From NCBI GenBank assembly GCA_002269645.1, contig NIVC01000299.1, positions 268,598-332,597 on the forward strand: a DNA stretch of 64,000 nt. Reading direction: 5' to 3'. The DNA comes from Macrostomum lignano. Lineage: Eukaryota. The translations under genes were made by a program, and so were the position numbers. The notes under the pieces are model-generated. The model had not been told where the DNA came from and made no database searches. It saw only the letters and a program-made list of their open reading frames with translations. Below, in pieces: positions 16,219 to 47,565 of the stretch. Each line of letters begins with the position of its first letter. Positions within the stretch are counted from its first letter, which is position 1.

Positions 16219-16701
16219 AACCTTTGTGGGTCCTCTGAAAGCTAAAGTTACTTGCACCAAGCGATTTTCATTTAGCCTCCCATTGTTCCTTTCTAAATAG
16301 TAAATATGAACAACAATAAAACGCGACAGAAAGACAGTTTGCGGGCATATTGCCATCAGTCTGCTGGCTAGAATCACTCGCCAAAGAGATTTATTGATTA
16401 CTTAGTTGCGGTGTATTAGATATTTATGCGATCGAGGACAGAGCATTTTTGGGACGTTTCGAACCACGAACTGATTAGTACAACAAGCAATTGGAATCAG
16501 TAAAGAGCGTCTGTGCTTCGGATAGTCCCAGTAGACAATCTCGCTACCGTAAGCCGCCTGCCTCTTCTTGCCGCCACTTTGATTGGTTTTTTTTCACGGG
16601 AGGGTCTTTGCAATGCGGGACTGGGATAACTTTGGGCTTGGTGCGGAGGAACTCTCGGGAATGACGTTGCAGGGCTTCAACTCGTTTGTTACAGGCCGGA
16701 T

Positions 16702-17241
16702 CTAGTCCGACTCGTCATCGATGGCGTCCATCGAGCCTCGCTTGCCTCCAAGCCTGGGGCTCTTGTAATAGGCCTTCTTGCCGAGACGAGGGCTGACGTA
16801 CCAGGCCTTCTTGCCGAGACGAGGGCTGACGTACCAGGCCTTCTTGCCGAGACGAGGGCTGACGTACCAGGCCTTCTTGCCGAGACGAGGGCTGACGTAC
16901 CAGGCCTTCTTGCCGAGGCGTGGGCTGACGTACCAGGCCTTCTTGCCGAGGCGTGGGCTGACGTACCAGGCCTTCTTGCCGAGGCGTGGGCTGACGTACC
17001 AGGCCTTCTTGCCGAGGCGTGGGCTGACGTACCAGGCCTTCTTGCCGAGACGAGGGCTGACGTACCAAGCCTTCTTTCCCAGCCTAGGACTGGCATAGTA
17101 GGCCCTCTTGTCGTCGCTGCTGTCAGCTGCTACACTTTTCTTGCTAGCATGACTGTCGTCATGCTCTTCTGCAGTTGCCATGACAACCAGAGCAGCCACG
17201 GCTAGAGCGGCAATGACGCTGCCTGTTCCGCAGAAACGCAT
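16702..17241 (-). CDS. Neuropeptide precursor (PRXamide type): AYYASPRLa, 9x AWYVSPRLa, AYYKSPRLGa
   Basis: 179-aa single-exon ORF with a hydrophobic signal peptide (MRFCGTGSVIAALAVAALVVMATA) and acidic spacers. Eleven peptides are each followed by a Gly amide donor and KK/KR dibasic sites. Differences between the AWYVSPRLG units are synonymous. AATAAA on the minus strand at 16390-16395. Confidence 0.93.
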   Translation of the reverse strand: MRFCGTGSVIAALAVAALVVMATAEEHDDSHASKKSVAADSSDDKRAYYASPRLGKKAWYVSPRLGKKAWYVSPRLGKKAWYVSPRLGKKAWYVSPRLGKKAWYVSPRLGKKAWYVSPRLGKKAWYVSPRLGKKAWYVSPRLGKKAWYVSPRLGKKAYYKSPRLGGKRGSMDAIDDESD

Positions 17242-18421: not shown

Positions 18422-19351
18422 GCACTCGCGCTCACACAAAATGCGTCCTAGATCTGTTGAGCATTTTTAGCATTCTTTCATAGAAGTACTTTAGACAAAC
18501 TAAAGTACAAGCAAAGCGAATCCGTTGCCGAAAATTGTCTGCTGGAAAATGAAAGGCTGCAGTAATTGAAAACGATCGATTGTCAATCGCACTGCTTCAC
18601 AGGTGAGGATTGGAAATGACGCTGTGAGTCAATATTAAAAATAGTCTGCTCCAGAGATGTGGCGTGAAGCTCCAGTGCCAGCTGCTTTCATCTGCATGCA
18701 TGGAAATAACTGGTTGAGCACTTGACTCACTAACGAATTTTACAGGGCATTGGGAACCTTTTGTAGAATAGTGTTAGGGAAGGCAACGTGAGCAGACGTC
18801 TGGAGACTGACCCGAACTCCAGCTGCAGCACCCATGCCCTGAGTCCTCTCTAAGATCAAGAACTCTACCTACCAATGTGGTCTCTAGCTTGGATGAGTTG
18901 AAATTTTAAAATTGCTTTTCTATTTTTGTGACAAGTTTCCCCAGGAGAGGGCCGGCTTCAGTGATGAACTTCTCCCTAACTACTGCTGAAAACCAAACTG
19001 GAAGAAATTCTTTAGAATCGCAAATTTATTCTGCAACTTCATCATTTCACGTATTGCAAATATTTCTGCTTCGTGAATTAAATAGAAGAGCCTCTCCTCC
19101 AAAACACGGACTACTTATAGCAGTATTGATAGATCCTTTGTCTTATTTTTCCCATTACTTAACTTTTGCATAACAAATGCAGTTTTCAGGGCGTTTGCAA
19201 CTTAAAATAGAGGCTGGAGTCATGAACTTTAGTATCAAAATACAAAAGCAACTTCTAGTGGTCCTTGCAAATAATAATATTTTGAAGTTTATTCGGATTC
19301 TTGTGGATATAATTACGCCCTAAGAAGGTCCATGTAAAGTGAGTGAGTGAG

Positions 19352-19378
19352 TGAGTTAGTTTTTAGTTAGTTAGTTAA

Positions 19379-19473
<95 letters not shown>

Positions 19474-19474
19474 A

Positions 19475-19505
<31 letters not shown>

Positions 19506-19524
19506 ATTAATTAGTTAGTTAGTC

Positions 19525-19572
<48 letters not shown>

Positions 19573-19573
19573 C

Positions 19574-19609
<36 letters not shown>

Positions 19610-19622
19610 ATTAGTTAGTTAA

Positions 19623-19653
<31 letters not shown>

Positions 19654-19672
19654 ATTAATTAGTTAGTTAGTC

Positions 19673-19745
<73 letters not shown>

Positions 19746-19754
19746 ATTAATTAA

Positions 19755-19797
<43 letters not shown>

Positions 19798-19802
19798 ATT
19801 AA

Positions 19803-19861
<59 letters not shown>

Positions 19862-19862
19862 A

Positions 19863-19913
<51 letters not shown>

Positions 19914-19932
19914 ATTAATTAGTTAGTTAGTC

Positions 19933-19969
<37 letters not shown>

Positions 19970-19974
19970 ATTAA

Positions 19975-20037
<63 letters not shown>

Positions 20038-20046
20038 ATTAATTAA

Positions 20047-20101
<55 letters not shown>

Positions 20102-20106
20102 ATAAA

Positions 20107-20166
<60 letters not shown>

Positions 20167-20167
20167 C

Positions 20168-20218
<51 letters not shown>

Positions 20219-20219
20219 C

Positions 20220-20254
<35 letters not shown>

Positions 20255-20255
20255 C

Positions 20256-20298
<43 letters not shown>

Positions 20299-20300
20299 CT
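19352..20300. repeat. (TTAG)n microsatellite, about 950 bp
   Basis: Direct periodicity. Confidence 0.98.
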
Positions 20301-20659
20301 ACTTAGTTTTAGTTTTTTGAGAGTTATCTTCATTATGAACTTTTCCCTCTATTTGCGCTTGTAATATTCTTTCATGCTACTCCTCGCATTCCGTGAGTAG
20401 CTTATAAGGACATGCTTTTTTGCGAATGAATTGTTTACACAAAGAAAAATTTCGTAGAAAAGAGGGATATTTTAGCCAGGGCAGTCAATTAATAGCTGGT
20501 AATTAATTTTGTTAAAATCGAGTATTTTCTCTGTTGATTATGCCTTTGATATACTTTTCTTGACCGCTTTATTAAAAATTTGTAAACAAAAATCTGGAAA
20601 AATAATTTTCAGTAATCTGGGGAGAGCCTTGCATTGGGATTTTGTAGAATTAATCGGTG

Positions 20660-22602
20660 TTATAATAATCTCCTTTGCCTGCCGATTTGCGCTGGTCGGA
20701 GCTCAGATCGGATTGGCAGGTAGGACACTCGGCAGAATTTGCAGCACCAATTGTAAACAATGTCGTCGCTCCTTGTGAGACACCTCAGCTGGCTTAGCGA
20801 CCTCTGGCGCTTGCTGGCCAGCGGCTGGGTAGCTGGAAAATATTAGACTGATGAATTTAAATATGTCAATGACTACCAGAGGTTGATGGGCGAGGATTTT
20901 AGGTAAAAGAAGCCCCAAGCTCCCTTCCAGTTCAGATGGGCTGCAGGGTCCATGGTTCAGTTGGCTCCAAGCTCCCTTCCAATCCAGATAGGCTGCAGGG
21001 TCCATGGTTCAGTTGGCTCCAAGCTCCCTTCCAATCCAGATAGGCTGCAGGATCCATGGTTCAGTTGGCTCCAAGCTCCCTTCCAGTCCAGATAGGCTGC
21101 AGGGTCCATGGTTCAGTTGGCTCCAAGCTCCCTTCCAATCCAGATAGGCTGCAGGGTCCATGGTTCAGTTGGCTCCAAGCTCCCTTCCAATCCAGATAGG
21201 CTGCAGGGTCCATGGTTCAGTTGGCTCCAAGCTCCCTTCCAGTCCAGATAGGCTGCAGGGTCCATGGTTCAGTAAGCTCGAAGCTCCCTTCCAGTCCAGG
21301 TGGGCTTCAGGGTCCATGGTTCAGTTGGCTCCAAGCTCCCTTCCAGTCCAGGTGGGCTGCAGGTCCATGGTACAGTTGGCTCCAAGCTTCCTTCCAGTCC
21401 AGGTGGGCTTCAGGGTCCATGGTTCAGTAAGCTCCAAGCTCCCTTCCAGTCCAGGTGGGCTGCAGGGTCCATGGTTCAGTAAGCTCCAAGCTCCCTTCCA
21501 GTCCAGGTGGGCTGCAGGTCCATGGTTCAGTTGGCTCCAAGCTTCCTTCCAGTCCAGGTGGGCTGCAGGGTCCATGGTTCAGTAAGCTCCAAGCTCCCTT
21601 CCAGTCCAGGTGAACTGCAGGTCCATGGTTCAGTTGGCTCGAAGCTCCCTTCCAGTCCAGGTGGGCTGCAGGGTCCATGGTTCAGTAAGCTCCAAGCTCC
21701 CTTCCAGTCCAGGTGGGCTGCAGGGTCCATGGTTCAGTTGGCTCGAAGCTCCCTTCCAGTCCAGGTGGGCTGCAGGGTCCATGGTTCAGTAAGCTCCAAG
21801 CTCCCTTCCAGTCCAGGTGGGCTGCAGGTCCATGGTTCAGTTGGCTCCAAGCTTCCTTCCAGTCCAGGTGGGCTGCAGGGTCCTTGGTTCAGTAAGCTCC
21901 AAGCTCCCTTCCAGTCCAGGTGGGCTGCAGGGTCCATGGTTCAGTTGGCTCGAAGCTCCCTTCCAGTCCAGGTGGGCTGCAGGGTCCATGGTTCAGTAAG
22001 CTCCAAGCTCCCTTCCAGTCCAGGTGGGCTGCAGGGTCCATGGTTCAGTAAGCTCGAAGCTCCCTTCCAGTCCAGGTGGGCTGCAGGGTCCATGGTTCAG
22101 TAAGCTCCAAGCTCCCTTCCAGTCCAGGTGGGCTGCAGGGTCCATGGTTCAGTTGGCTCCAAGCTCCCTTCCAGTCCAGGTGGGCTGCAGGGTCCATGGT
22201 TCAGTTGGCTCCAAGCTCCCTTCCAGTCCAGGTGAACTGCAGGTCCATGGTTCAGTAAGCTCCAAGCTCCCTTCCAGTCCAGATAGGCTGCAGGGTCCAT
22301 GGTTCAGTAGCCTCCAAGCTCTCTACCAGTCCAGATAGTCTGCGGAGTCTATGATTTAGTAAACTCGAAGCTCCCTTCCAGTCCAGGAGGGCTGCAGGGT
22401 CCATGGTTCAGTAGCTCTTAACTGATCCCTTCCAGTCCAGGTCGGCTGCAGGGTCCATGGCTAACTCACTCAGCCGCCGCAACGCCGTCCCTCGCTTGTC
22501 TTCGTACAGGCCGGCGGTGCTGTCGTAGACGCCGCCCCAGTCGGCGCAGGCGGCGGTCACCTCCTCGATCAGGCGGAGGCCGCACTCGGTCAGCCAGCGG
22601 GC
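20660..22602 (-). CDS. Insulin-like peptide paralog 2 (B-chain and A-chain exons; atypical Cys pattern, possibly a pseudogene)
   Basis: Exon 22602-22470 (phase 0-1): ARWLTECGLRLIEEVTAACADWGGVYDSTAGLYEDKRGTALRRL, with C-x11-C. Exon 20832-20660: TTQPLASKRQRSLSQLRCLTRSDDIVYNWCCKFCRVSYLPIRSELRPAQIGRQRRLL*. GT-AG sites and intron phase match the paralog at 24100-24739. No intact signal-peptide exon found. Confidence 0.8.
20905..22460. repeat. 52-bp minisatellite, about 30 copies, filling the ILP2 B/A intron
   Basis: GGTCCATGGTTCAGTTGGCTCCAAGCTCCCTTCCAGTCCAGGTGGGCTGCAG periodicity, starting about 10 nt inside the donor at 22469. Confidence 0.95.
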
Positions 22603-22611
22603 CTGCGAGTA

Positions 22612-23030
22612 TGTGTGACTCAGCAGCCATAGCATGTGTGACTCAGCAGCCATAGCATGTGTGACTCAGCAGCCATAGCATGTGTGACTCAGCAGCCATA
22701 GCATGTGTGACTCAGCAGCCATAGCATGTGTGACTCAGCAGCCATAGCATGTGTGACTCAGCAGCCATAGCATGTGTGACTCAGCAGCCATAGCATGTGT
22801 GACTCAGCAGCCATAGCATGTGTGACTCAGCAGCCATAGCATGTGTGACTCAGCAGCCATAGCATGTGTGACTCAGCAGCCATAGCATGTGTGACTCAGC
22901 AGCCATAGCATGTGTGACTCAGCAGCCATAGCATGTGTGACTCAGCAGCCATAGCATGTGTGACTCAGCAGCCATAGCATGTGTGACTCAGCAGCCATAG
23001 CATGTGTGACTCAGCAGCCATAGCATGTGA
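22612..23030. repeat. 23-bp minisatellite (GCATGTGTGACTCAGCAGCCATA), about 18 copies
   Basis: Direct periodicity; spans almost the whole interval between the GTGAGT donor at 23035 and the CAG acceptor at 22603. Confidence 0.95.
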
Positions 23031-23270
23031 CTCACAGGATCGCTAGCCGATTGGCTGTCTCGACTGATTGGCTGGCCTCAGAACCCGCGCGAGTTTGCAA
23101 TTTTACGCAATAAGCTCACAATGCCGCATCTTCCGAACTTCTGAAGTTTCTCAACTATAGTTTATGGCGAAACCCCATTTTTAGTATATGGATTTGCGAA
23201 ATCTGTTTTAAAATCTTAAGTCTGTATTTAGAGCGTTGTAATCTATCTGAAGTAATATACTAGATTTGTG

Positions 23271-23820
23271 CAGCCCATTTGGGCTTACGCGCACCTCCAT
23301 TAGCAACTGCTTTGGAGGAGTAAGATCAGTCACTATGACCCTATGCTAGGCTGATGAACGAATGCCATTGGCTTGTGATCGAAGCGCTCGACATAAATGA
23401 ACACCCAAATGACATTGTAAGGTTGTAAGATTGTTGAATATAAAAGAAAAGATGGTTAACAGCATCCATCGGCGCGTTGAAACCACTGCCGGCAGAGGTC
23501 GCCTACGAAAGGGTGGCAATCGCCAAGGCAAGTTGGTCGAGAGCCTCAGCCCCAGGTCGAACCCTTTGGTGACGGAGCAGAAAATGCAGCAAAGTTGAAG
23601 GAACAGTTCTGATTGGTTATCAGATTTTGACTATCAGAAGAGCTCTGGAAAAGGCACTGAAAATTGTTGGTAGAGACGCTGACAGTTTGCCGAATGACTG
23701 ACGAGGGTTTGGACCAAATTAAGTGCCGCTGTGCCAGCCTTGCTACCATAGACAAAAGCTCCACTGCACTGGCAAGCGTGTCTTGGATTGAATTAAATGC
23801 ATGTAAGCCCAAATGGCCTG
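23271..23820. mobile_element. MITE-like non-autonomous DNA element, about 550 bp, with 18-bp terminal inverted repeats
   Basis: CAGCCCATTTGGGCTTAC (23271-23288) versus GTAAGCCCAAATGGCCTG (23803-23820) is a 17/18 inverted match. A second diverged copy lies at 6808-8010. No TSD identified. Confidence 0.6.
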
Positions 23821-24099
23821 AAAAGGCCATATTTAATTTTACAGATTTTTCCCAACGAGCTTGTGAAACATCCTTCGACGAAACGCTACGCGCAGATGCA
23901 GTGGGAAACACAGAGCTAAAATGTCCGTACGCCAAAAGAGCCATGATTTTGAGAGTTATTTGGGAAACTTTTTGGTCGCAGAACTCTCTGCGTTCGATTT
24001 TAATGAATTTTTATTCATGTTAATATCGTATTGGTGGCAAGTTTGTCAAATTCATTCGAGCTTTGTCACTCCGGATCAGAGAGGCAGCTCAACTCGGAC

Positions 24100-24739
24100 T
24101 CAGACGGGCTCAGGCAGGGCGCAGAACTGCTGCAGGTAGGAGACGCGGCACCAGCGGCAGCAGCACTGGTTCACCACGTCATTGCTCTTGTTGAGCCGGC
24201 AGCCAAGGTCGAAGATGCTCGGCACGCTGCTCCTCTTGCTGGCGGCGACGCCTGCGGGCAGCGAGACGGGGCGAGTTTGCAACGGGTTTGCTGCTGGGGA
24301 TTCCCTATTGGGAAGAGAGAGGAGAAAATGCACTGGGCAAGTTTGAAACGGGTTTGCTGCTGGGGATTCCCTATTGGGAAGAGAGAGGAGAAAATGCACT
24401 GGGCAAGTTTGCAGCAAGACACGCACGGTCCAGCAGTGCCGCGGTGGCCAGTCTCTGCCGGCGCCGGCTCACGAGCTGCCCGTAGATGCCGCTGGTGCTG
24501 TCGTAGACCCCGCCGCGGTCAGCGCAGGCGTTCCGGAGCTCCTGCACCAGACGCTCGCCGCACTCGTTGATTGACTCATTCTGCGAATCAGGTTGCGAGG
24601 CCGGTTGGCGAGTGGCTGCACGGAGGCGAGTCCTGGCATGGGAGATTCAGGAGAGAGAGGGACTTACCGGATCCTTGTAGGCCGCGCAGGAGGCGGTGAG
24701 GCAGGCAAAAGCCAGGGCGGTCAGCGCGAAGGCGTTCAT
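24100..24739 (-). CDS. Insulin-like peptide precursor 1 (125 aa, 8 Cys in the mature region)
   Basis: Exons 24739-24668 (MNAFALTALAFACLTASCAAYKDP, signal peptide), 24580-24427 (NESINECGERLVQELRNACADRGGVYDSTSGIYGQLVSRRRQRLATAALLD) and 24251-24100 (RVAASKRSSVPSIFDLGCRLNKSNDVVNQCCCRWCRVSYLQQFCALPEPV*). All GT-AG, 378 nt in frame. B chain C-x11-C; A chain CC-x3-C-x8-C; basic processing sites RRRQR and KR; AATAAA at 24010-24015. Confidence 0.92.
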
Positions 24740-26744: not shown

Positions 26745-29213
26745 TATCTCTGTGTCTGTCTCGGAGCATGTTTCAGTGTCTGTCTCAGTGTCTGTTTCAG
26801 TGTCTGTCTCAGTGTCTGTCTCAGTGTCTGTCTCAGTGCCTGTCTCAGTGTCTGTCTCAGTGCCTGTCTTAGTATCAGTCTCAGTGTCTGTCTCAGTATC
26901 AGTCTCAGTGTGTGTCTCAGTATCAGTCTCAGTGTGTGTCTCAGTATCAGTCTCAGTGTGTGTCTCAGTATCAGTCTCAGTGTCTGTCTCAGTGTCTGTC
27001 TCAGTGTCTGTCTCAGTGTCTGTCTCAGTGTCTGCCTCAGTGTCTGCCTCAGTGTCTGTCTCAGTGCCTGTCTCAGTGTCTGCCTCAGTGTCTGTCTCAG
27101 TGTCTGTCTCAGTGCCTGTCTCAGTGTCTGTCTCAGTGTCTGTCTCAGTGCCTGTCTCAGTGTCTGCCTCAGTGTCTGTCTCAGTGTCTGTCTCAGTGCC
27201 TGTCTCAGTGTCTGCCTCAGTGTCTGTCTCAGAATCAGTCTCAGTGTCTGCCTCAGTATCTGTCTCAGTGTCTGTCTCAGTATCAGTCTCAGTGTCTGTC
27301 TCAGTGTCTGTCTCAGTGTCTGTCTCAGTGTCTGTCTCAGTATCAGTCTCAGTGTGTGTCTCAGTGTCTGTCTCAGTGTCTGTCTCAGTGCCTGTCTCAG
27401 TGTCTGCCTCAGTGTCTGTCTCAGTGTCTGTCTCAGTGCCTGTCTCAGTGTCTGCCTCAGTGTCTGTCTCAGAATCAGTCTCAGTGTCTGCCTCAGTATC
27501 TGTCTCAGTGTCTGTCTCAGTGTCTGTCTCAGTGCCTGTCTTAGTATCAGTCTCAGTGTCTGTCTCAGTATCAGTCTCAGTGTGTGTCTCAGTATCAGTC
27601 TCAGTGTGTGTCTCAGTATCAGTCTCAGTGTGTGTCTCAGTATCAGTCTCAGTGTCTGTCTCAGTGTCTGTCTCAGTGTCTGTCTCAGTGTCTGTCTCAG
27701 TGTCTGCCTCAGTGTCTGCCTCAGTGTCTGTCTCAGTGCCTGTCTCAGTGTCTGCCTCAGTGTCTGTCTCAGTGTCTGTCTCAGTGCCTGTCTCAGTGTC
27801 TGTCTCAGTGTCTGTCTCAGTGCCTGTCTCAGTGTCTGCCTCAGTGTCTGTCTCAGTGTCTGTCTCAGTGCCTGTCTCAGTGTCTGCCTCAGTGTCTGTC
27901 TCAGAATCAGTCTCAGTGTCTGCCTCAGTATCTGTCTCAGTGTCTGTCTCAGTATCAGTCTCAGTGTCTGTCTCAGTGTCTGTCTCAGTGTCTGTCTCAG
28001 TGTCTGTCTCAGTATCAGTCTCAGTGTGTGTCTCAGTGTCTGTCTCAGTGTCTGTCTCAGTGCCTGTCTCAGTGTCTGCCTCAGTGTCTGTCTCAGTGTC
28101 TGTCTCAGTGCCTGTCTCAGTGTCTGCCTCAGTGTCTGTCTCAGAATCAGTCTCAGTGTCTGCCTCAGTATCTGTCTCAGTGTCTGTCTCAGTGTCTGTC
28201 TCAGTGCCTGTCTTAGTATCAGTCTCAGTGTCTGTCTCAGTATCAGTCTCAGTGTGTGTCTCAGTATCAGTCTCAGTGTGTGTCTCAGTATCAGTCTCAG
28301 TGTGTGTCTCAGTATCAGTCTCAGTGTCTGTCTCAGTGTCTGTCTCAGTGTCTGTCTCAGTGTCTGTCTCAGTGTCTGCCTCAGTGTCTGCCTCAGTGTC
28401 TGTCTCAGTGCCTGTCTCAGTGTCTGCCTCAGTGTCTGTCTCAGTGTCTGTCTCAGTGCCTGTCTCAGTGTCTGTCTCAGTGTCTGTCTCAGTGCCTGTC
28501 TCAGTGTCTGCCTCAGTGTCTGTCTCAGTGTCTGTCTCAGTGCCTGTCTCAGTGTCTGCCTCAGTGTCTGTCTCAGAATCAGTCTCAGTGTCTGCCTCAG
28601 TATCTGTCTCAGTGTCTGTCTCAGTATCAGTCTCAGTGTCTGTCTCAGTGTCTGTCTCAGTGTCTGTCTCAGTGTCTGTCTCAGTATCAGTCTCAGTGTG
28701 TGTCTCAGTGTCTGTCTCAGTGTCTGTCTCAGTGCCTGTCTCAGTGTCTGCCTCAGTGTCTGTCTCAGTGTCTGTCTCAGTGCCTGTCTCAGTGTCTGCC
28801 TCAGTGTCTGTCTCAGAATCAGTCTCAGTGTCTGCCTCAGTATCTGTCTCAGTGTCTGTCTCAGTATCAGTCTCAGTGTCTGTCTCAGTGTCTGTCTCAG
28901 TGTCTGTCTCAGTGTCTGTCTCAGTGTCTGTCTCAGTGTCTGTCTCAGTATCAGTCTCAGTGTGTGTCTCAGTGTCTGTCTCAGTGTGTCTCAGTGCCTG
29001 TCTTAGTATCTGTCTCAGTATCAGTCTCAGTGTCTGCCTCAGTGTCTGCCTCAGTGTCTGTCTCCGTGCCTGTCTCAGTGTCTGTCTCAGTGTCTGTCTC
29101 AGTGTGTCTCAGTGTCTGTCTCAGTGTCTGTCTCAGTGTCTGTCTCAGTGTCTGTCTCAGTGTCTGTCTCAGTGCCTGTCTCAGTGTCTGTCTCAGTGTC
29201 TGTCTCAGTGTCT
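26745..29213. repeat. 12-bp satellite (TCAGTGTCTGTC) with a 672-bp higher-order repeat
   Basis: Variant patterns recur at 672-bp offsets (identical ORF starts at 26912, 27584 and 28256). Confidence 0.95.
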
Positions 29214-35998: not shown

Positions 35999-37833
<1,835 letters not shown>

Positions 37834-38274
37834 CATATAGATAAGCTGGCCAGTCGTGTGCAGACGGGCTGCACAAGTTTGGCAAATCAATGGAAAGATG
37901 AAGCAAGTCGCAGAGAGTGAATGAGTTCATGGAAAACTAGTTATTCTACAATTTGATGCAGCGCAGAGGCTGCGTGCCCGAGATAGAAGGGATTGGGGAT
38001 CTCGGACAGGGTGGGGGCAGGGGAGCCGAGCAGTCCCGGCCAACTGGCTCGCGGGGGCGATTTTCGCACGGGTCGCTCTGAGTGGCGGGCGCGAGTGGCC
38101 GCATGCAGTGTGAATTAAAGCTTTGGAGGGCCGGCCAGTCACCCAGCCAGCTCCGGCGATTCCCTTCAGTCCTGCCCTGCTGGCCAAGGTGAGTCAAGGT
38201 GAGCGCCTGATTTTGAATTCCTGCAGTAGTGCGTTACATTTCCTTTCATTTGTGGCTGCTGGAGTGGCAATTTG

Positions 38275-45540: not shown

Positions 45541-46385
45541 ATTAGAGACGTCATTCCTTTTGACTTGTTTTTCAACGTCTCAAACCGTCCTTTTCCTTTG
45601 AATCTTCGGTGGGGATCTGTGGGATTTGTTTTCAGCCTGTTTCGGGAAGAGTTTTCTCCTGTTTTTTCTCCCAGCCCCGCCGGCCTCCCCGGGAAGAAAT
45701 TCAGAGGGGAAATCGGCAGGGGGGCAGTGAGGATTCTGGCCTGGCGCGCTCGGAAAAGTCATAAAATTTTATTTTCGCATTTCTGCCGAAATCTCCTCGG
45801 GATCTCGATGGACGCAGCTCCCCAAGCCTAATCGCCTGCTCAGGCCTCAGTGTGCTCAGCTCAGAGGCCCAGCCAGCCCGGGGCTGCCGTGTACTTTCCG
45901 CCGAGGCCCAACATGAAGTGTCGCTGCGGCCCAGCAGCCGCGGTGCTTCATTCCACAATTCGCTCAACAATTTTTTATTCGCTTGTCTGGCTGAGAGCCT
46001 CCAGGGAAGCCCATTTCAGCCTGAGTCTACTGAATTATTCTCGCGGCGCTACTCAAATCCCCACTTGTCTCCGAGAGGCCCGCAGGTCTCCAGCTCAGGC
46101 CACTTGGAGACATTTTTTTACTCTCCCGCATAAATAATTCAGCTGGATGGAGACTGCGGACTCCGCCGGGCTCTGCGCGGGCCTTTGTTTCTTAGAAACG
46201 CACACAGGATTTTAAATTGATTTCTTAGAATTTCGTTTTCAAAAGCGCGATTTTTTGTTTGGGGTTAGTCTTAATAGATTATTTCTTCAAATAGATTTTT
46301 TATCAATACTCAGCTTTGATTCTGAAAGAGTTATAAATCTGCATTTCTTTATACAATTCCAAAAGAAAATTGATAATATTCTAAT

Positions 46386-47565
46386 CCACTCTGATCCAAC
46401 TGTTCGTGTTTGGCTAGATTAGCAATCCACTCTGATCCAACTGTTCGTGTTTGGCTAGATTAGCAATCCACTCTAATCCAACTGTTCGTGTTTGGCTAGA
46501 TTAGCAATCCACTCTAATCCAACTGTTCGTGTTTGGCTAGATTAGCAATCCACTCTGATCCAATGGTTCGTGTTTGGCTAGATTAGCAATCCACTCTAAT
46601 CCAACTGTTCGTGTTTAACTAGATTAGCAATCCACTCTGATCCAATGGTTCGTGTTTGGCTAGATTAGCAATCCACTCTAATCCAACTGTTCGTGTTTGG
46701 CTAGATTAGCAATCCACTCTGATCCAACTGTTCGTGTTTGGCTAGATTAGCAATCCACTCTAATCCAACTGTTCGTGTTTGGCTAGATTAGCAATCCACT
46801 CTGATCCAATGGTTCGTGTTTGGCTAGATTAGCAATCCACTCTGATCCAACTGTTCGTGTTTGGCTAGATTAGCAATCCACTCTGATCCAACTGTTCGTG
46901 TTTGGCTAGATTAGCAATCCACTCTAATCCAACTGTTCGTGTTTGGCTAGATTAGCAATCCACTCTAATCCAACTGTTCGTGTTTGGCTAGATTAGCAAT
47001 CCACTCTGATCCAATGGTTCGTGTTTGGCTAGATTAGCAATCCACTCTAATCCAACTGTTCGTGTTTGGCTAGATTAGCAATCCACTCTGATCCAATGGT
47101 TCGTCTTTGGCTAGATTAGCAATCCACTCTGATCCAACTGTTCGTGTTTGGCTAGATTAGCAATCCACTCTAATCCAACTGTTCGTGTTTGGCTAGATTA
47201 GCAATCCACTCTAATCCAACTGTTCGTGTTTGGCTAGATTAGCAATCCACTCTGATCCAATGGTTCGTGTTTGGCTAGATTAGCAATCCACTCTGATCCA
47301 ATGGTTCGTGTTTGGCTAGATTAGCAATCCACTCTAATCCAACTGTTCGTGTTTGGCTAGATTAGCAATCCACTCTGATCCAATGGTTCGTCTTTGGCTA
47401 GATTAGCAATCCACTCTGATCCAACTGTTCGTGTTTGGCTAGATTAGCAATCCACTCTAATCCAACTGTTCGTGTTTGGCTAGATTAGCAATCCACTCTA
47501 ATCCAACTGTTCGTGTTTGGCTAGATTAGCAATCCACTCTGATCCAATGGTTCGTGTTTGGCTAG
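46386..47565. repeat. 41-bp minisatellite (CCACTCTGATCCAACTGTTCGTGTTTGGCTAGATTAGCAAT), about 29 copies
   Basis: Direct periodicity; shares the core TAGATTAGCAATCCA with the 21-bp array. Confidence 0.95.

What the first reader, a model, noticed from the sequence alone, without database searches (positions are those of the whole stretch)
20660..22602. Tandem ILP paralog that has lost exactly two canonical A-chain cysteines
Seen: the B exon is clearly paralogous (ECGLRLIEEVTAACADWGGVYDST versus ECGERLVQELRNACADRGGVYDST) with the same intron phase. The A chain reads WCCKFCRVSYL-PIRSE: the first Cys of the CC pair is Trp (TGG), and the terminal Cys is absent. The gap fits an 18-nt deletion between two CTG codons (CAGCAGTTCTGCGCCCTG in ILP1), followed by a new basic tail. 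The family-specific extra cysteines are kept, so the total is still even (6). Inference: either a young pseudogene or a re-wired ILP with a new disulfide pattern, possibly a receptor antagonist.
Basis: partly seen in the sequence, partly recalled or inferred. Interest (0 to 1): 0.72.

Follow-up and report, generated by a model that had tools for sequence, protein, structure and literature searches.

The report
Decaying flatworm insulin-like gene copy
Next to an intact insulin-like peptide gene of the flatworm Macrostomum lignano lies an old sister copy that has no signal-peptide exon, has lost one key cysteine by substitution and has lost the last cysteine through an 11-base frameshift deletion, so it is most likely a recently disabled gene, not a re-wired hormone.

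Summary
The window is Macrostomum lignano DNA, identical to GenBank contig NIVC01000299.1 in every segment compared. The sequence facts hold. A second insulin-like gene (ILP2: B exon 22602-22470, A exon 20832-20660, minus strand) lies 1.5 kb downstream of the intact ILP1. It has the same acceptor position and the same phase-1 intron. It has Trp (TGG) at A6, no A20 Cys and six Cys in all.

The proposed 18-nt in-frame deletion is wrong. A third copy of the locus in the same assembly (L003) keeps 11 nt (TGCACAACTTG) that encode ...SYLHNLC, which is the canonical CX8C. The window copy therefore carries an 11-nt frameshift deletion. Its "new basic tail" is an out-of-frame reading of the former coding sequence. 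L003 has its own 2-nt frameshift, so no copy encodes A20 in frame.

ILP2 also lacks any signal-peptide exon; a perfect 23-bp x18 array abuts the B-exon acceptor. The family-invariant B22 Arg is Trp. ILP2 scores below Pfam's insulin cut-off.

The duplication is old (dS about 0.74), and the gene was constrained for most of its history, so the lesions are recent.

Verdict: a recently disabled, unannotated ILP paralogue. Expression could not be tested. Interest is low.

The parts
22470..22602 (-). ILP2 B-chain exon. It encodes ARWLTECGLRLIEEVTAACADWGGVYDSTAGLYEDKRGTALRRL plus the first base of a split codon. B7 Cys is at 22584-22582 and B19 Cys at 22548-22546. B22 is TGG (Trp) at 22539-22537, where all flatworm relatives have Arg.
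   Evidence: tblastn against ILP1 gives E = 7.6e-10. The exon is 100% identical in L001, L002 and L003. Family alignment.
22603..22610 (-). All that remains of the upstream intron: ACTCGCAG, the 3' splice acceptor. It sits at the same position relative to GAG TGC as the ILP1 exon 2 acceptor (TTCGCAG).
22611..23029 (-). Perfect 23-bp tandem array (18.2 copies, 100% matches) that abuts the acceptor, where ILP1 has its signal-peptide exon and intron 1. Each unit contains TGAGTCA. In-frame ATGs at 22653 and 22635 would give MAAESHMLWLLSHTYSQ-ARW..., which is a poor signal peptide.
   Evidence: Copy number is about 14, 18 and 19 in L001, L002 and L003, from the coordinates.
20833..22469 (-). ILP2 phase-1 intron (1637 nt, against 175 nt in ILP1). 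Almost all of it is a 52-bp minisatellite (20915-22460, 29.8 copies). The intron is 2155 nt in copy L001.
20660..20832 (-). ILP2 A-chain exon as it now reads: TTQPLASKRQRSLSQLRCLTRSDDIVYNWCCKFCRVSYLPIRSELRPAQIGRQRRLL*. KR is at 20812-20807, the extra N-terminal Cys at 20782-20780, A6 TGG at 20749-20747, A7 and A8 Cys at 20746-20741, and A11 Cys at 20734-20732.
   Evidence: tblastn against ILP1 gives E = 1.7e-4.
20715..20722 (-). Junction of the 11-nt frameshift deletion, TACC|TGCC. Copy L003 has TACC-TGCACAACTTG-TGCC here, which encodes the A20 Cys (SYLHNLC).
20660..20716 (-). Out-of-frame tail PIRSELRPAQIGRQRRLL* created by the frameshift. In the original frame the same DNA reads QSDLSSDQRKSAGKGDYYNTD and stops at TAA 20652-20650.
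20568..20573 (-). AATAAA poly(A) signal, about 90 nt downstream of the ILP2 stop. ILP1 has one at 24015-24010.
   Evidence: This is a sequence motif only; its use was not tested.
24100..24739 (-). ILP1, the intact neighbour and reference (125 aa; BOX15_Mlig006842g1/g3). It has a signal-peptide exon (24739-24668), a B exon (24580-24427) and an A exon (24251-24100). It has eight Cys and the A-chain signature CCCX2CX8C. A TATA-like box lies at 24832-24825.
   Evidence: (Pfam Insulin 26.4 bits, cut-off 23).

Best explanation
ILP2 is an old tandem duplicate of the flatworm insulin-like peptide gene ILP1. It was kept as a working gene for most of its history and is now a recently disabled, non-processed pseudogene.

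Shown:
1. It was an ordinary member of the flatworm 8-Cys ILP family. Its B chain has CX11C. Its A chain has KRQRSLSxLxC...CCCxxCx8C.
2. One canonical cysteine (A6) became Trp by a single base change, TGC to TGG. The B22 Arg became Trp.
3. In the window-type copies, an 11-nt deletion between two TGC triplets removed the A20 Cys codon and shifted the frame. Translation now runs out of frame to a chance TAA.
4. Another copy of the locus kept those 11 nt but carries a separate 2-nt frameshift just upstream.
5. No exon encoding a signal peptide is present. A perfect 23-bp array reaches to 8 nt from the B-exon acceptor.

Inferred: the product, if it is made at all, cannot enter the secretory pathway. 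It also cannot form the A20-B19 disulfide that nucleates insulin folding. It therefore has no hormone function. The even count of six cysteines is a by-product of two separate lesions.
For: - Organism and family. ILP1 is 100% identical to BOX15_Mlig006842g1/g3 and 99% identical to g2. It passes Pfam Insulin at 26.4 bits against a cut-off of 23 and hits IGF and insulin structures.
- Frameshift. The alignment of four copies shows the 11-nt segment only in L003. It is homologous to ILP1 CAGCAGTTCTGC. L003 also has a separate GA deletion. Translations: the actual tail is out of frame, while the frame with the 11 nt gives CRVSYLHNLC, which is CX8C.
- Pfam Insulin scores: 15.6 bits over profile positions 3-76 for the actual product; 20.1 bits over 3-81/81 with the 11 nt; no hit for the L003 product. 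ILP2 has no insulin hit in the PDB sequences.
- Family conservation. All seven relatives in the alignment keep A6 and A20 Cys: two other M. lignano ILP families, the Fasciola gigantica ILP and an insect bombyxin-like protein. The flatworm relatives also keep B22 Arg. ILP2 alone deviates. The CCCX2CX8C signature of flatworm ILPs is described in PMC5391603.
- No signal exon. There is no homology to the ILP1 promoter, exon 1 or intron 1 upstream of ILP2. The in-array ATG peptides have a maximum 8-residue hydrophobicity of 0.96, against 2.24 for the ILP1 signal peptide. The array is 100% perfect.
- Role of A20-B19. It is the first disulfide to form and is needed for native folding and ER exit, and an odd Cys count causes misfolding (PMC8514764).
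- Age and constraint. dS is 0.74 and dN/dS is 0.51, with a bootstrap interval of 0.28-0.90. Before the tail, ILP2 has 10 lineage-specific changes against 7 in ILP1. Under neutral simulation, P(no stop) = 0.077 and P(at least 6 of 8 Cys kept) = 0.05 at d = 0.37.
- No gene is called at ILP2 in any of the three copies in GenBank.
Against: - The reading frame is open across both exons. The GT and AG splice sites, the intron phase, both dibasic sites and an AATAAA are all kept.
- Both frameshifts land in the same alternative frame and give the same tail. The chance of that is 1/2.
- dN/dS is below 1, although this pairwise value averages over the long functional past and over the ILP1 lineage.
- Expression was not tested.
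- Non-annotation is weak evidence, because the GenBank annotation dropped transcripts that overlap repeats (PMC5730564).
- ILP1 exon 1 ends in phase 0 and the ILP2 B exon starts in phase 0. A shared signal exon used by alternative splicing would therefore be in frame. That is an inference.
- A weak candidate exon, MLLTIFSFIFNNLTTLQCHLG|GT, lies at 23465-23403.
- The 2-nt deletion in L003 sits exactly where identity to the other copies ends. It could be a mosaic or polishing artefact of the assembly.
Confidence: 0.8

Rival explanations
1. ILP2 is a functional, secreted, re-wired insulin-like peptide. It would have six cysteines in a new pairing (for example B19 with A11) and a basic C-terminal tail, and might act as a receptor antagonist or a binding-protein decoy. 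It would obtain a signal peptide from ILP1 exon 1 by alternative splicing, or from an unrecognised upstream exon.
For: - The ORF is open, the splice sites are canonical, the KR sites are kept, and the Cys number is even.
- The ILP1 exon 1 donor (phase 0) and the ILP2 B-exon acceptor (phase 0) are compatible.
- Both copy types end with the same tail.
- Old-assembly gene models join ILP1 to ILP2 exons, and one of them uses the 22470/20832 junction (P0003 and P0005).
Against: - The tail arises from an 11-nt frameshift, not from an in-frame change.
- The two copy types differ in the helix that follows A11, SYL against LPAQLV. That is not what a conserved new design would show.
- The frame with the 11 nt has seven Cys, so six Cys is not a kept feature.
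- The A20-B19 disulfide, the folding nucleus of the family, is missing (PMC8514764).
- B22 Arg is lost.
- The product scores below the Pfam cut-off.
- No signal peptide of its own was found.
- The fused gene models come from an error-rich older assembly and are visibly frameshifted.
Confidence: 0.07
2. ILP2 is transcribed but has no hormone function. It might be the downstream part of an ILP1 read-through or polycistronic unit, possibly SL trans-spliced at the B-exon acceptor. The product would be a non-coding or non-secreted transcript, that is, a transcribed pseudogene.
For: - The M. lignano spliced leader ends in ATG (PMC8629364). Joined to the acceptor at 22602 it would read ATG GCC CGC TGG..., in frame with the B exon. 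This is an inference.
- About 30% of M. lignano genes are trans-spliced and 15% lie in operons.
- The repeat-adjusted distance from the ILP1 poly(A) signal to the ILP2 B exon is about 1 kb.
- ILP2 has no promoter homologous to that of ILP1.
Against: - No transcript data were available to me.
- No gene or transcript is annotated there in GenBank.
- The resulting protein, MARWLTECG..., would have no signal peptide, so this reading does not rescue a hormone role.
Confidence: 0.1
3. The missing cysteines are assembly or polishing errors in a highly duplicated, repeat-rich region, and the real gene is intact.
For: - The assembly is redundant, with near-identical copies (PMC5730564).
- In L003, identity to the other copies stops abruptly inside the A exon, next to a 2-nt indel. 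That pattern could be a consensus mosaic.
Against: - TGG is present in all three assembled copies, and the 11-nt deletion is present in two contigs.
- An 11-nt gap outside any homopolymer is not a typical long-read error.
- No intact ILP2-like protein exists among the M. lignano entries recovered from the protein collections searched.
Confidence: 0.03

Closest known systems
ILP1 of Macrostomum lignano (BOX15_Mlig006842g1/g2/g3), the adjacent intact gene
   Same: - The exon 2 acceptor is at the same position and the C-peptide intron is phase 1 in both.
- The B chain has CX11C with ACADxGGVYDST.
- The ASKR processing site is kept.
- The extra N-terminal A-chain Cys and the A8 Cys are kept.
- CRVSYL is kept.

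   Different: - ILP2 has no signal-peptide exon.
- A6 Cys and B22 Arg are both Trp.
- The A20 Cys is lost through an 11-nt frameshift.
- The intron is 1.6-2.2 kb and filled by a minisatellite, against 175 nt in ILP1.
- ILP2 scores below the Pfam cut-off.

Flatworm 8-Cys insulin-like peptides with the A-chain signature CCCX2CX8C: schistosome ILPs (PMC5391603), the Fasciola gigantica ILP WUG45439.1, and M. lignano Mlig029872/027486 and Mlig020476
   Same: ILP2 clearly descends from this family. Its KRQRSLSQLRC segment is closer to Mlig029872 (KRQRSLSSLAC) than ILP1 is.
   Different: ILP2 is the only sequence in the alignment without the first C of CCC and without the X8C cysteine.
C. elegans alpha-type insulins, natural members that lack the A6-A11 disulfide (Pierce et al. 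2001, recalled from memory and not checked here)
   Same: They are a precedent that the intrachain A6-A11 bond can be lost in a working insulin-family peptide. A6-A11 is also the one disulfide that is dispensable for ER exit of proinsulin (PMC8514764).
   Different: From memory, those peptides lose both partners and keep A20-B19. ILP2 loses only A6, keeps A11, and also loses A20. That leaves B19 and A11 without their normal partners.
Non-processed (duplicated) pseudogenes in neuropeptide and hormone gene clusters
   Same: ILP2 is a tandem duplicate with its introns kept, a frameshift, essential residues lost and its 5' exon lost.
   Different: There is no premature stop in the present frame and the splice signals are intact, so it looks coding at first sight.

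Membership tests
Insulin/IGF/relaxin superfamily (Pfam PF00049) | Score at or above the Pfam gathering cut-off of 23 bits | tested here: not met
   ILP2 scores 15.6 bits, E = 0.034. ILP1 scores 26.4 bits. With the 11 nt of L003 the score is 20.1 bits over the full profile.
Insulin/IGF/relaxin superfamily (Pfam PF00049) | B chain with two Cys spaced CX11C | tested here: met
   C-GLRLIEEVTAA-C. The Cys codons are at 22584-22582 and 22548-22546.
Insulin/IGF/relaxin superfamily (Pfam PF00049) | A chain CCX3CX8C (CCCX2CX8C in flatworms, PMC5391603) | tested here: not met
   ILP2 has WCCKFC and then no Cys. CX8C appears only when the 11 nt kept in L003 are read.
Insulin/IGF/relaxin superfamily (Pfam PF00049) | N-terminal signal peptide | tested here: not met
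   No homologue of ILP1 exon 1 was found. The upstream in-frame ATGs give a weakly hydrophobic peptide. One unconserved candidate exon lies at 23465-23403. SignalP was not available.
Insulin/IGF/relaxin superfamily (Pfam PF00049) | Dibasic sites flanking a C-peptide, and an intron inside the C-peptide region | tested here: met
   DKR follows the B chain and ASKR precedes the A chain. The intron is phase 1, as in ILP1.
Insulin/IGF/relaxin superfamily (Pfam PF00049) | Common descent with a bona fide member | tested here: met
   tblastn against ILP1 inside the window gives E = 7.6e-10 and 1.7e-4. The acceptor and phase are shared.
Non-processed pseudogene | Frame-disrupting lesion relative to the ancestral reading frame | tested here: met
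   An 11-nt deletion in the window, L001 and L002. An independent 2-nt deletion in L003.
Non-processed pseudogene | Loss of residues or parts that are invariant and essential in the family | tested here: met
   A6 Cys, A20 Cys, B22 Arg and the signal exon are all lost. The role of A20-B19 is described in PMC8514764.
Non-processed pseudogene | Relaxed or neutral evolution since inactivation | tested here: inconclusive
   Pairwise dN/dS is 0.51 (0.28-0.90) over 65 codons. The relative-rate count is 10 against 7, not significant. The copies are too similar to be informative. No orthologues were available.
Non-processed pseudogene | No functional transcript or protein | not testable with these tools
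   No M. lignano transcript data could be reached. ILP2 is absent from the GenBank annotation, but that annotation excluded transcripts overlapping repeats.
Insulin-family variants that lack the A6-A11 bond (C. elegans alpha type) | Both A6 and A11 Cys absent while A20-B19 and A7-B7 are kept (definition recalled from memory) | tested here: not met
   ILP2 keeps the A11 Cys (20734-20732) and lacks A20.

The most novel reading that the evidence does not exclude
ILP2 is expressed from the ILP1 promoter. It would use either alternative splicing of the ILP1 signal-peptide exon (24668) onto the ILP2 B exon (22602), which is in frame, or an unrecognised exon. It would then be secreted as a six-Cys insulin-like peptide that lacks the A20-B19 bond and carries a basic tail. 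That would be a natural insulin-fold variant with a non-canonical disulfide map, possibly an antagonist of flatworm insulin signalling.
Probability: 0.06. Interest if true: 0.65.

Novelty: new member of a known kind. Interest (0 to 1): 0.2.

Why it matters
As it stands this is ordinary: an unannotated, recently decayed paralogue in a gene family that is multi-copy in a partly duplicated genome.

It has three modest uses:
- It is a caution for annotators of M. lignano ILPs. The locus looks coding, and older gene models fused it to ILP1.
- It is a clean example of how a frameshift can mimic an elegant in-frame loss of exactly two cysteines.
- It documents that the M. lignano ILP1-ILP2 pair is present in three near-identical copies that appear to be homogenised by gene conversion.

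The locus would bear on how much of the insulin disulfide framework is dispensable only if it proved to be expressed and secreted.

Tried and rejected
1. ILP2 protein search. A search of the 5.8-billion-protein collection with the spliced ILP2 protein gave no scored hits. It did not even return the old gene model P0003, which contains the B exon, so that negative result is of limited value.

I did not try to get round this. No structure prediction of ILP2 was made, and the ILP1 query was used for the representative search instead.

3. Signal exon or promoter homologous to ILP1 upstream of ILP2. Only chance 8-10-mers were found.

4. The 18-nt in-frame deletion model. It was rejected on the four-copy alignment. 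MAFFT alone on ILP1 against ILP2 gave an ambiguous 9-nt gap.

5. Homology of the ILP2 tail region to the ILP1 stop and 3'UTR (CCG-TCTGAG-TCCGA). It is only marginal: 87 of 2000 shuffles reach the observed score. It was not used as evidence.

6. First dN/dS run. It had a one-codon misalignment in the B block and was discarded. The corrected run is.

7. Constraint from the three copies. They are nearly identical across the coding and non-coding parts of the ILP1-ILP2 block, so this is uninformative.

8. Literature and supplement searches for Mlig006842 or for M. lignano ILPs. Nothing was found.

9. Non-annotation as evidence of silence. It was down-weighted after reading the annotation methods.
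Full report
**What is there.** The region lies on the minus strand of a eukaryotic, minisatellite-rich window. Translating it gives two adjacent insulin-like genes.

ILP1 has three exons: 24739-24668 (signal peptide), 24580-24427 (B chain) and 24251-24100 (A chain). It encodes 125 aa with eight Cys. It passes Pfam Insulin at 26.4 bits against a cut-off of 23. It matches IGF-II, IGF-I and insulin chains in the PDB.

ILP1 is 100% identical to Macrostomum lignano BOX15_Mlig006842g1/g3 and 99% identical to g2. Every window segment I compared is identical to locus L002, which is GenBank NIVC01000299.1, assembly GCA_002269645.1.

It has canonical GT and AG sites and the same phase-1 intron as ILP1. 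Paralogy is well beyond chance, with in-window tblastn E = 7.6e-10 and 1.7e-4.

The conceptual product is ARWLTECGLRLIEEVTAACADWGGVYDSTAGLYEDKRGTALRRLTTQPLASKRQRSLSQLRCLTRSDDIVYNWCCKFCRVSYLPIRSELRPAQIGRQRRLL*. It has Trp (TGG, 20749-20747) at A6, no A20 Cys and six Cys in all. The descriptive part of the finding is therefore right.

**The deletion is a frameshift.** The Mlig_3_7 assembly holds three copies of the ILP1-ILP2 pair:
- L001 on NIVC01000300.1.
- L002, which is the window.
- L003, on NIVC01000300.1 in inverted orientation.

The ILP2 B exon is identical in all three. The A exon is identical in L001 and L002. L003 reads ...TGCC--GTGTCCTACC TGCACAACTTG TGCCAATCC....

The 11 extra bases align with ILP1 CTG CAG CAG TTC TGC. 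In the ILP1-like frame they give CRVSYLHNLC, which is the canonical CX8C with the A20 cysteine.

The window-type copies therefore carry a derived 11-nt deletion between two TGC triplets (junction 20722-20715). The deletion shifts the frame. The "new basic tail" PIRSELRPAQIGRQRRLL* (20716-20660) is the old coding sequence read out of frame. In the old frame that DNA reads QSDLSSDQRKSAGKGDYYNTD and stops at 20652-20650.

L003 has its own 2-nt (GA) deletion just upstream. That deletion puts L003 in the same shifted frame, giving CRVLPAQLVPIRSELR...*. No assembled copy encodes A20 in frame.

Pfam agrees with this picture. The score is 15.6 bits over profile positions 3-76 for the actual product, and 20.1 bits over the whole profile when the 11 nt are read. 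The L003 product gives no insulin hit.

**Other lesions.**
- Conserved residues. I compared ILP2 with seven relatives: two further M. lignano ILP families (Mlig029872/027486 and Mlig020476), the Fasciola gigantica ILP and an insect bombyxin-like protein. Every relative keeps A6 and A20 Cys, and the flatworm relatives keep B22 Arg. ILP2 alone has Trp at A6, Trp at B22 (22539-22537) and nothing at A20. Schistosome ILPs are described with the same CCCX2CX8C signature (PMC5391603).
- Signal peptide. ILP2 has no signal-peptide exon. Homology to ILP1 starts at the exon 2 acceptor (TCGCAG). Eight nucleotides upstream of the acceptor begins a perfect 23-bp array of 18.2 copies (22611-23029). Nothing between that array and the ILP1 3' end resembles the ILP1 promoter, exon 1 or intron 1.
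- Possible start codons. In-frame ATGs inside the array would give MAAESHMLWLLSHTYSQ-, which is far less hydrophobic than the ILP1 signal peptide (0.96 against 2.24). One AT-rich candidate exon at 23465-23403 is hydrophobic but unconserved.
- PDB. ILP2 gives no insulin-family hit against the PDB sequences.

**Age.** Over 65 alignable codons, ILP1 and ILP2 differ by dS = 0.74 and dN = 0.375. dN/dS is 0.51, with a bootstrap interval of 0.28-0.90 (one search was misaligned and is discarded).

Before the frameshifted tail, ILP2 has 10 lineage-specific amino-acid changes against 7 in ILP1, using Mlig029872 as outgroup. The difference is not significant. ILP2 even keeps the ancestral KRQRSLSxLxC better than ILP1 does.

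I ran a crude neutral simulation over half the pairwise distance. An open frame was kept in 7.7% of runs, and at least 6 of 8 Cys were kept in 5%.

The duplicate is therefore old and was under constraint for most of its existence. The disabling changes are recent. "Young pseudogene" is right for the lesions and wrong for the duplication.

**Why I call it disabled.** In the insulin family, A20-B19 is the first disulfide to form and is required for native folding and ER exit. A6-A11 is dispensable for exit. An odd number of cysteines causes misfolding (PMC8514764).

The frame with the 11 nt has seven Cys. The present frame has six, but only because a second, frameshifting lesion removed A20. Add the missing signal peptide, the independent frameshift in the sister copy, and the different sequence the two copy types have after A11 (SYL against LPAQLV). 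Decay is then the most economical reading. I put it at 0.8.

**What keeps the rivals alive.**
- The frame is open, the splice signals and KR sites are intact, and an AATAAA lies at 20573-20568.
- ILP1 exon 1 ends in phase 0 and the ILP2 B exon starts in phase 0. Alternative splicing from the ILP1 signal exon would therefore be in frame (inference).
- The M. lignano spliced leader ends in ATG (PMC8629364). Trans-spliced at 22602 it would also be in frame, but it would give a protein without a signal peptide.
- Old-assembly gene models fuse ILP1 to ILP2 exons, and one (P0005) uses the 22470/20832 junction. These models are visibly frameshifted predictions.
- No gene is annotated at ILP2 in any copy. 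However, the GenBank annotation removed transcripts that overlap repeats (PMC5730564), so this weighs little.
- I could not reach any transcript data, and no orthologues from other Macrostomum species are in the collections searched.

**Assembly error.** TGG appears in three assembled copies, and the 11-nt gap appears in two contigs. The L003 GA deletion is less secure. It sits exactly where L003 changes from 100% identity with the other copies to about 4% divergence. That change could be a gene-conversion boundary or a consensus mosaic.

**Verdict.** ILP2 is a new, unannotated member of a known kind, a decayed paralogue, and is of low general interest.

Noticed in passing
window 20310-24100, compared with L001 and L003: Signs of concerted evolution. 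The block from the ILP1 3' end through ILP2 shows 0-1 differences in about 2.3 kb of unique sequence among the three genomic copies. The flanks differ by about 1-2% (L001) or 1-4% (L003). In L003 the identical block ends inside the ILP2 A exon, exactly at the 2-nt deletion. The cause could be a gene-conversion tract or an assembly mosaic.
   Followed up: partly
window 22611-23029: The perfect 23-bp array (100% matches, 18.2 copies) carries one TGAGTCA per unit, which matches the AP-1/TRE consensus. Two CCAAT motifs lie just upstream (about 23045-23075). Copy number is about 14, 18 and 19 in the three loci. Whether the array acts as a promoter or enhancer is unknown.
   Followed up: no
window 16689-17096 (-): The GenBank gene model downstream of ILP2 (135 aa in L002) translates to repeats of ARRPGTSA(H/L)(A/V)S. 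It coincides with a 33-bp tandem array at 16770-17076. It is probably a translated minisatellite and not a real protein gene.
   Followed up: partly
whole window: About 35 separate tandem arrays fill a large share of the 64 kb. Examples are (ATAG)460 at 35999-37837, a 12-bp unit x206 at 26747-29213, (AGTT)243 at 19338-20308 and a 41-bp unit x29 at 46383-47565. They account for the extreme GC and AT skews seen at 36-40 kb.
   Followed up: partly
window 24252-24426 (ILP1 intron 2): This intron holds a 66-bp unit repeated 2.2 times. L001 and L003 appear to lack one unit. Even the short intron of the intact gene is therefore length-polymorphic between copies.
   Followed up: no
proteins P0003 (A0A1I8F3V9) and P0005 (A0A1I8INL0): UniProt gene models from the older M. 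lignano assembly fuse ILP1 to ILP2 exons and to downstream sequence (207 aa and 681 aa). These are chimeric predictions that could mislead family surveys.
   Followed up: partly
M. lignano proteins P0006/P0012/P0013, P0010/P0016-P0018; Fasciola gigantica P0008: M. lignano has at least three ILP families, each in 2-4 genomic copies. All have the eight-Cys pattern C...CCCxxCx8C, with the extra pair inside the A-chain exon. The same pattern occurs in a Fasciola gigantica ILP. The pairing of the fourth disulfide appears to be uncharacterised.
   Followed up: partly
window 22602, with the M. lignano spliced leader (PMC8629364): The 35-nt spliced leader ends in ATG. If it were trans-spliced onto the ILP2 B-exon acceptor, that ATG would be in frame and give M-ARWLTECG.... 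This has not been tested.
   Followed up: no
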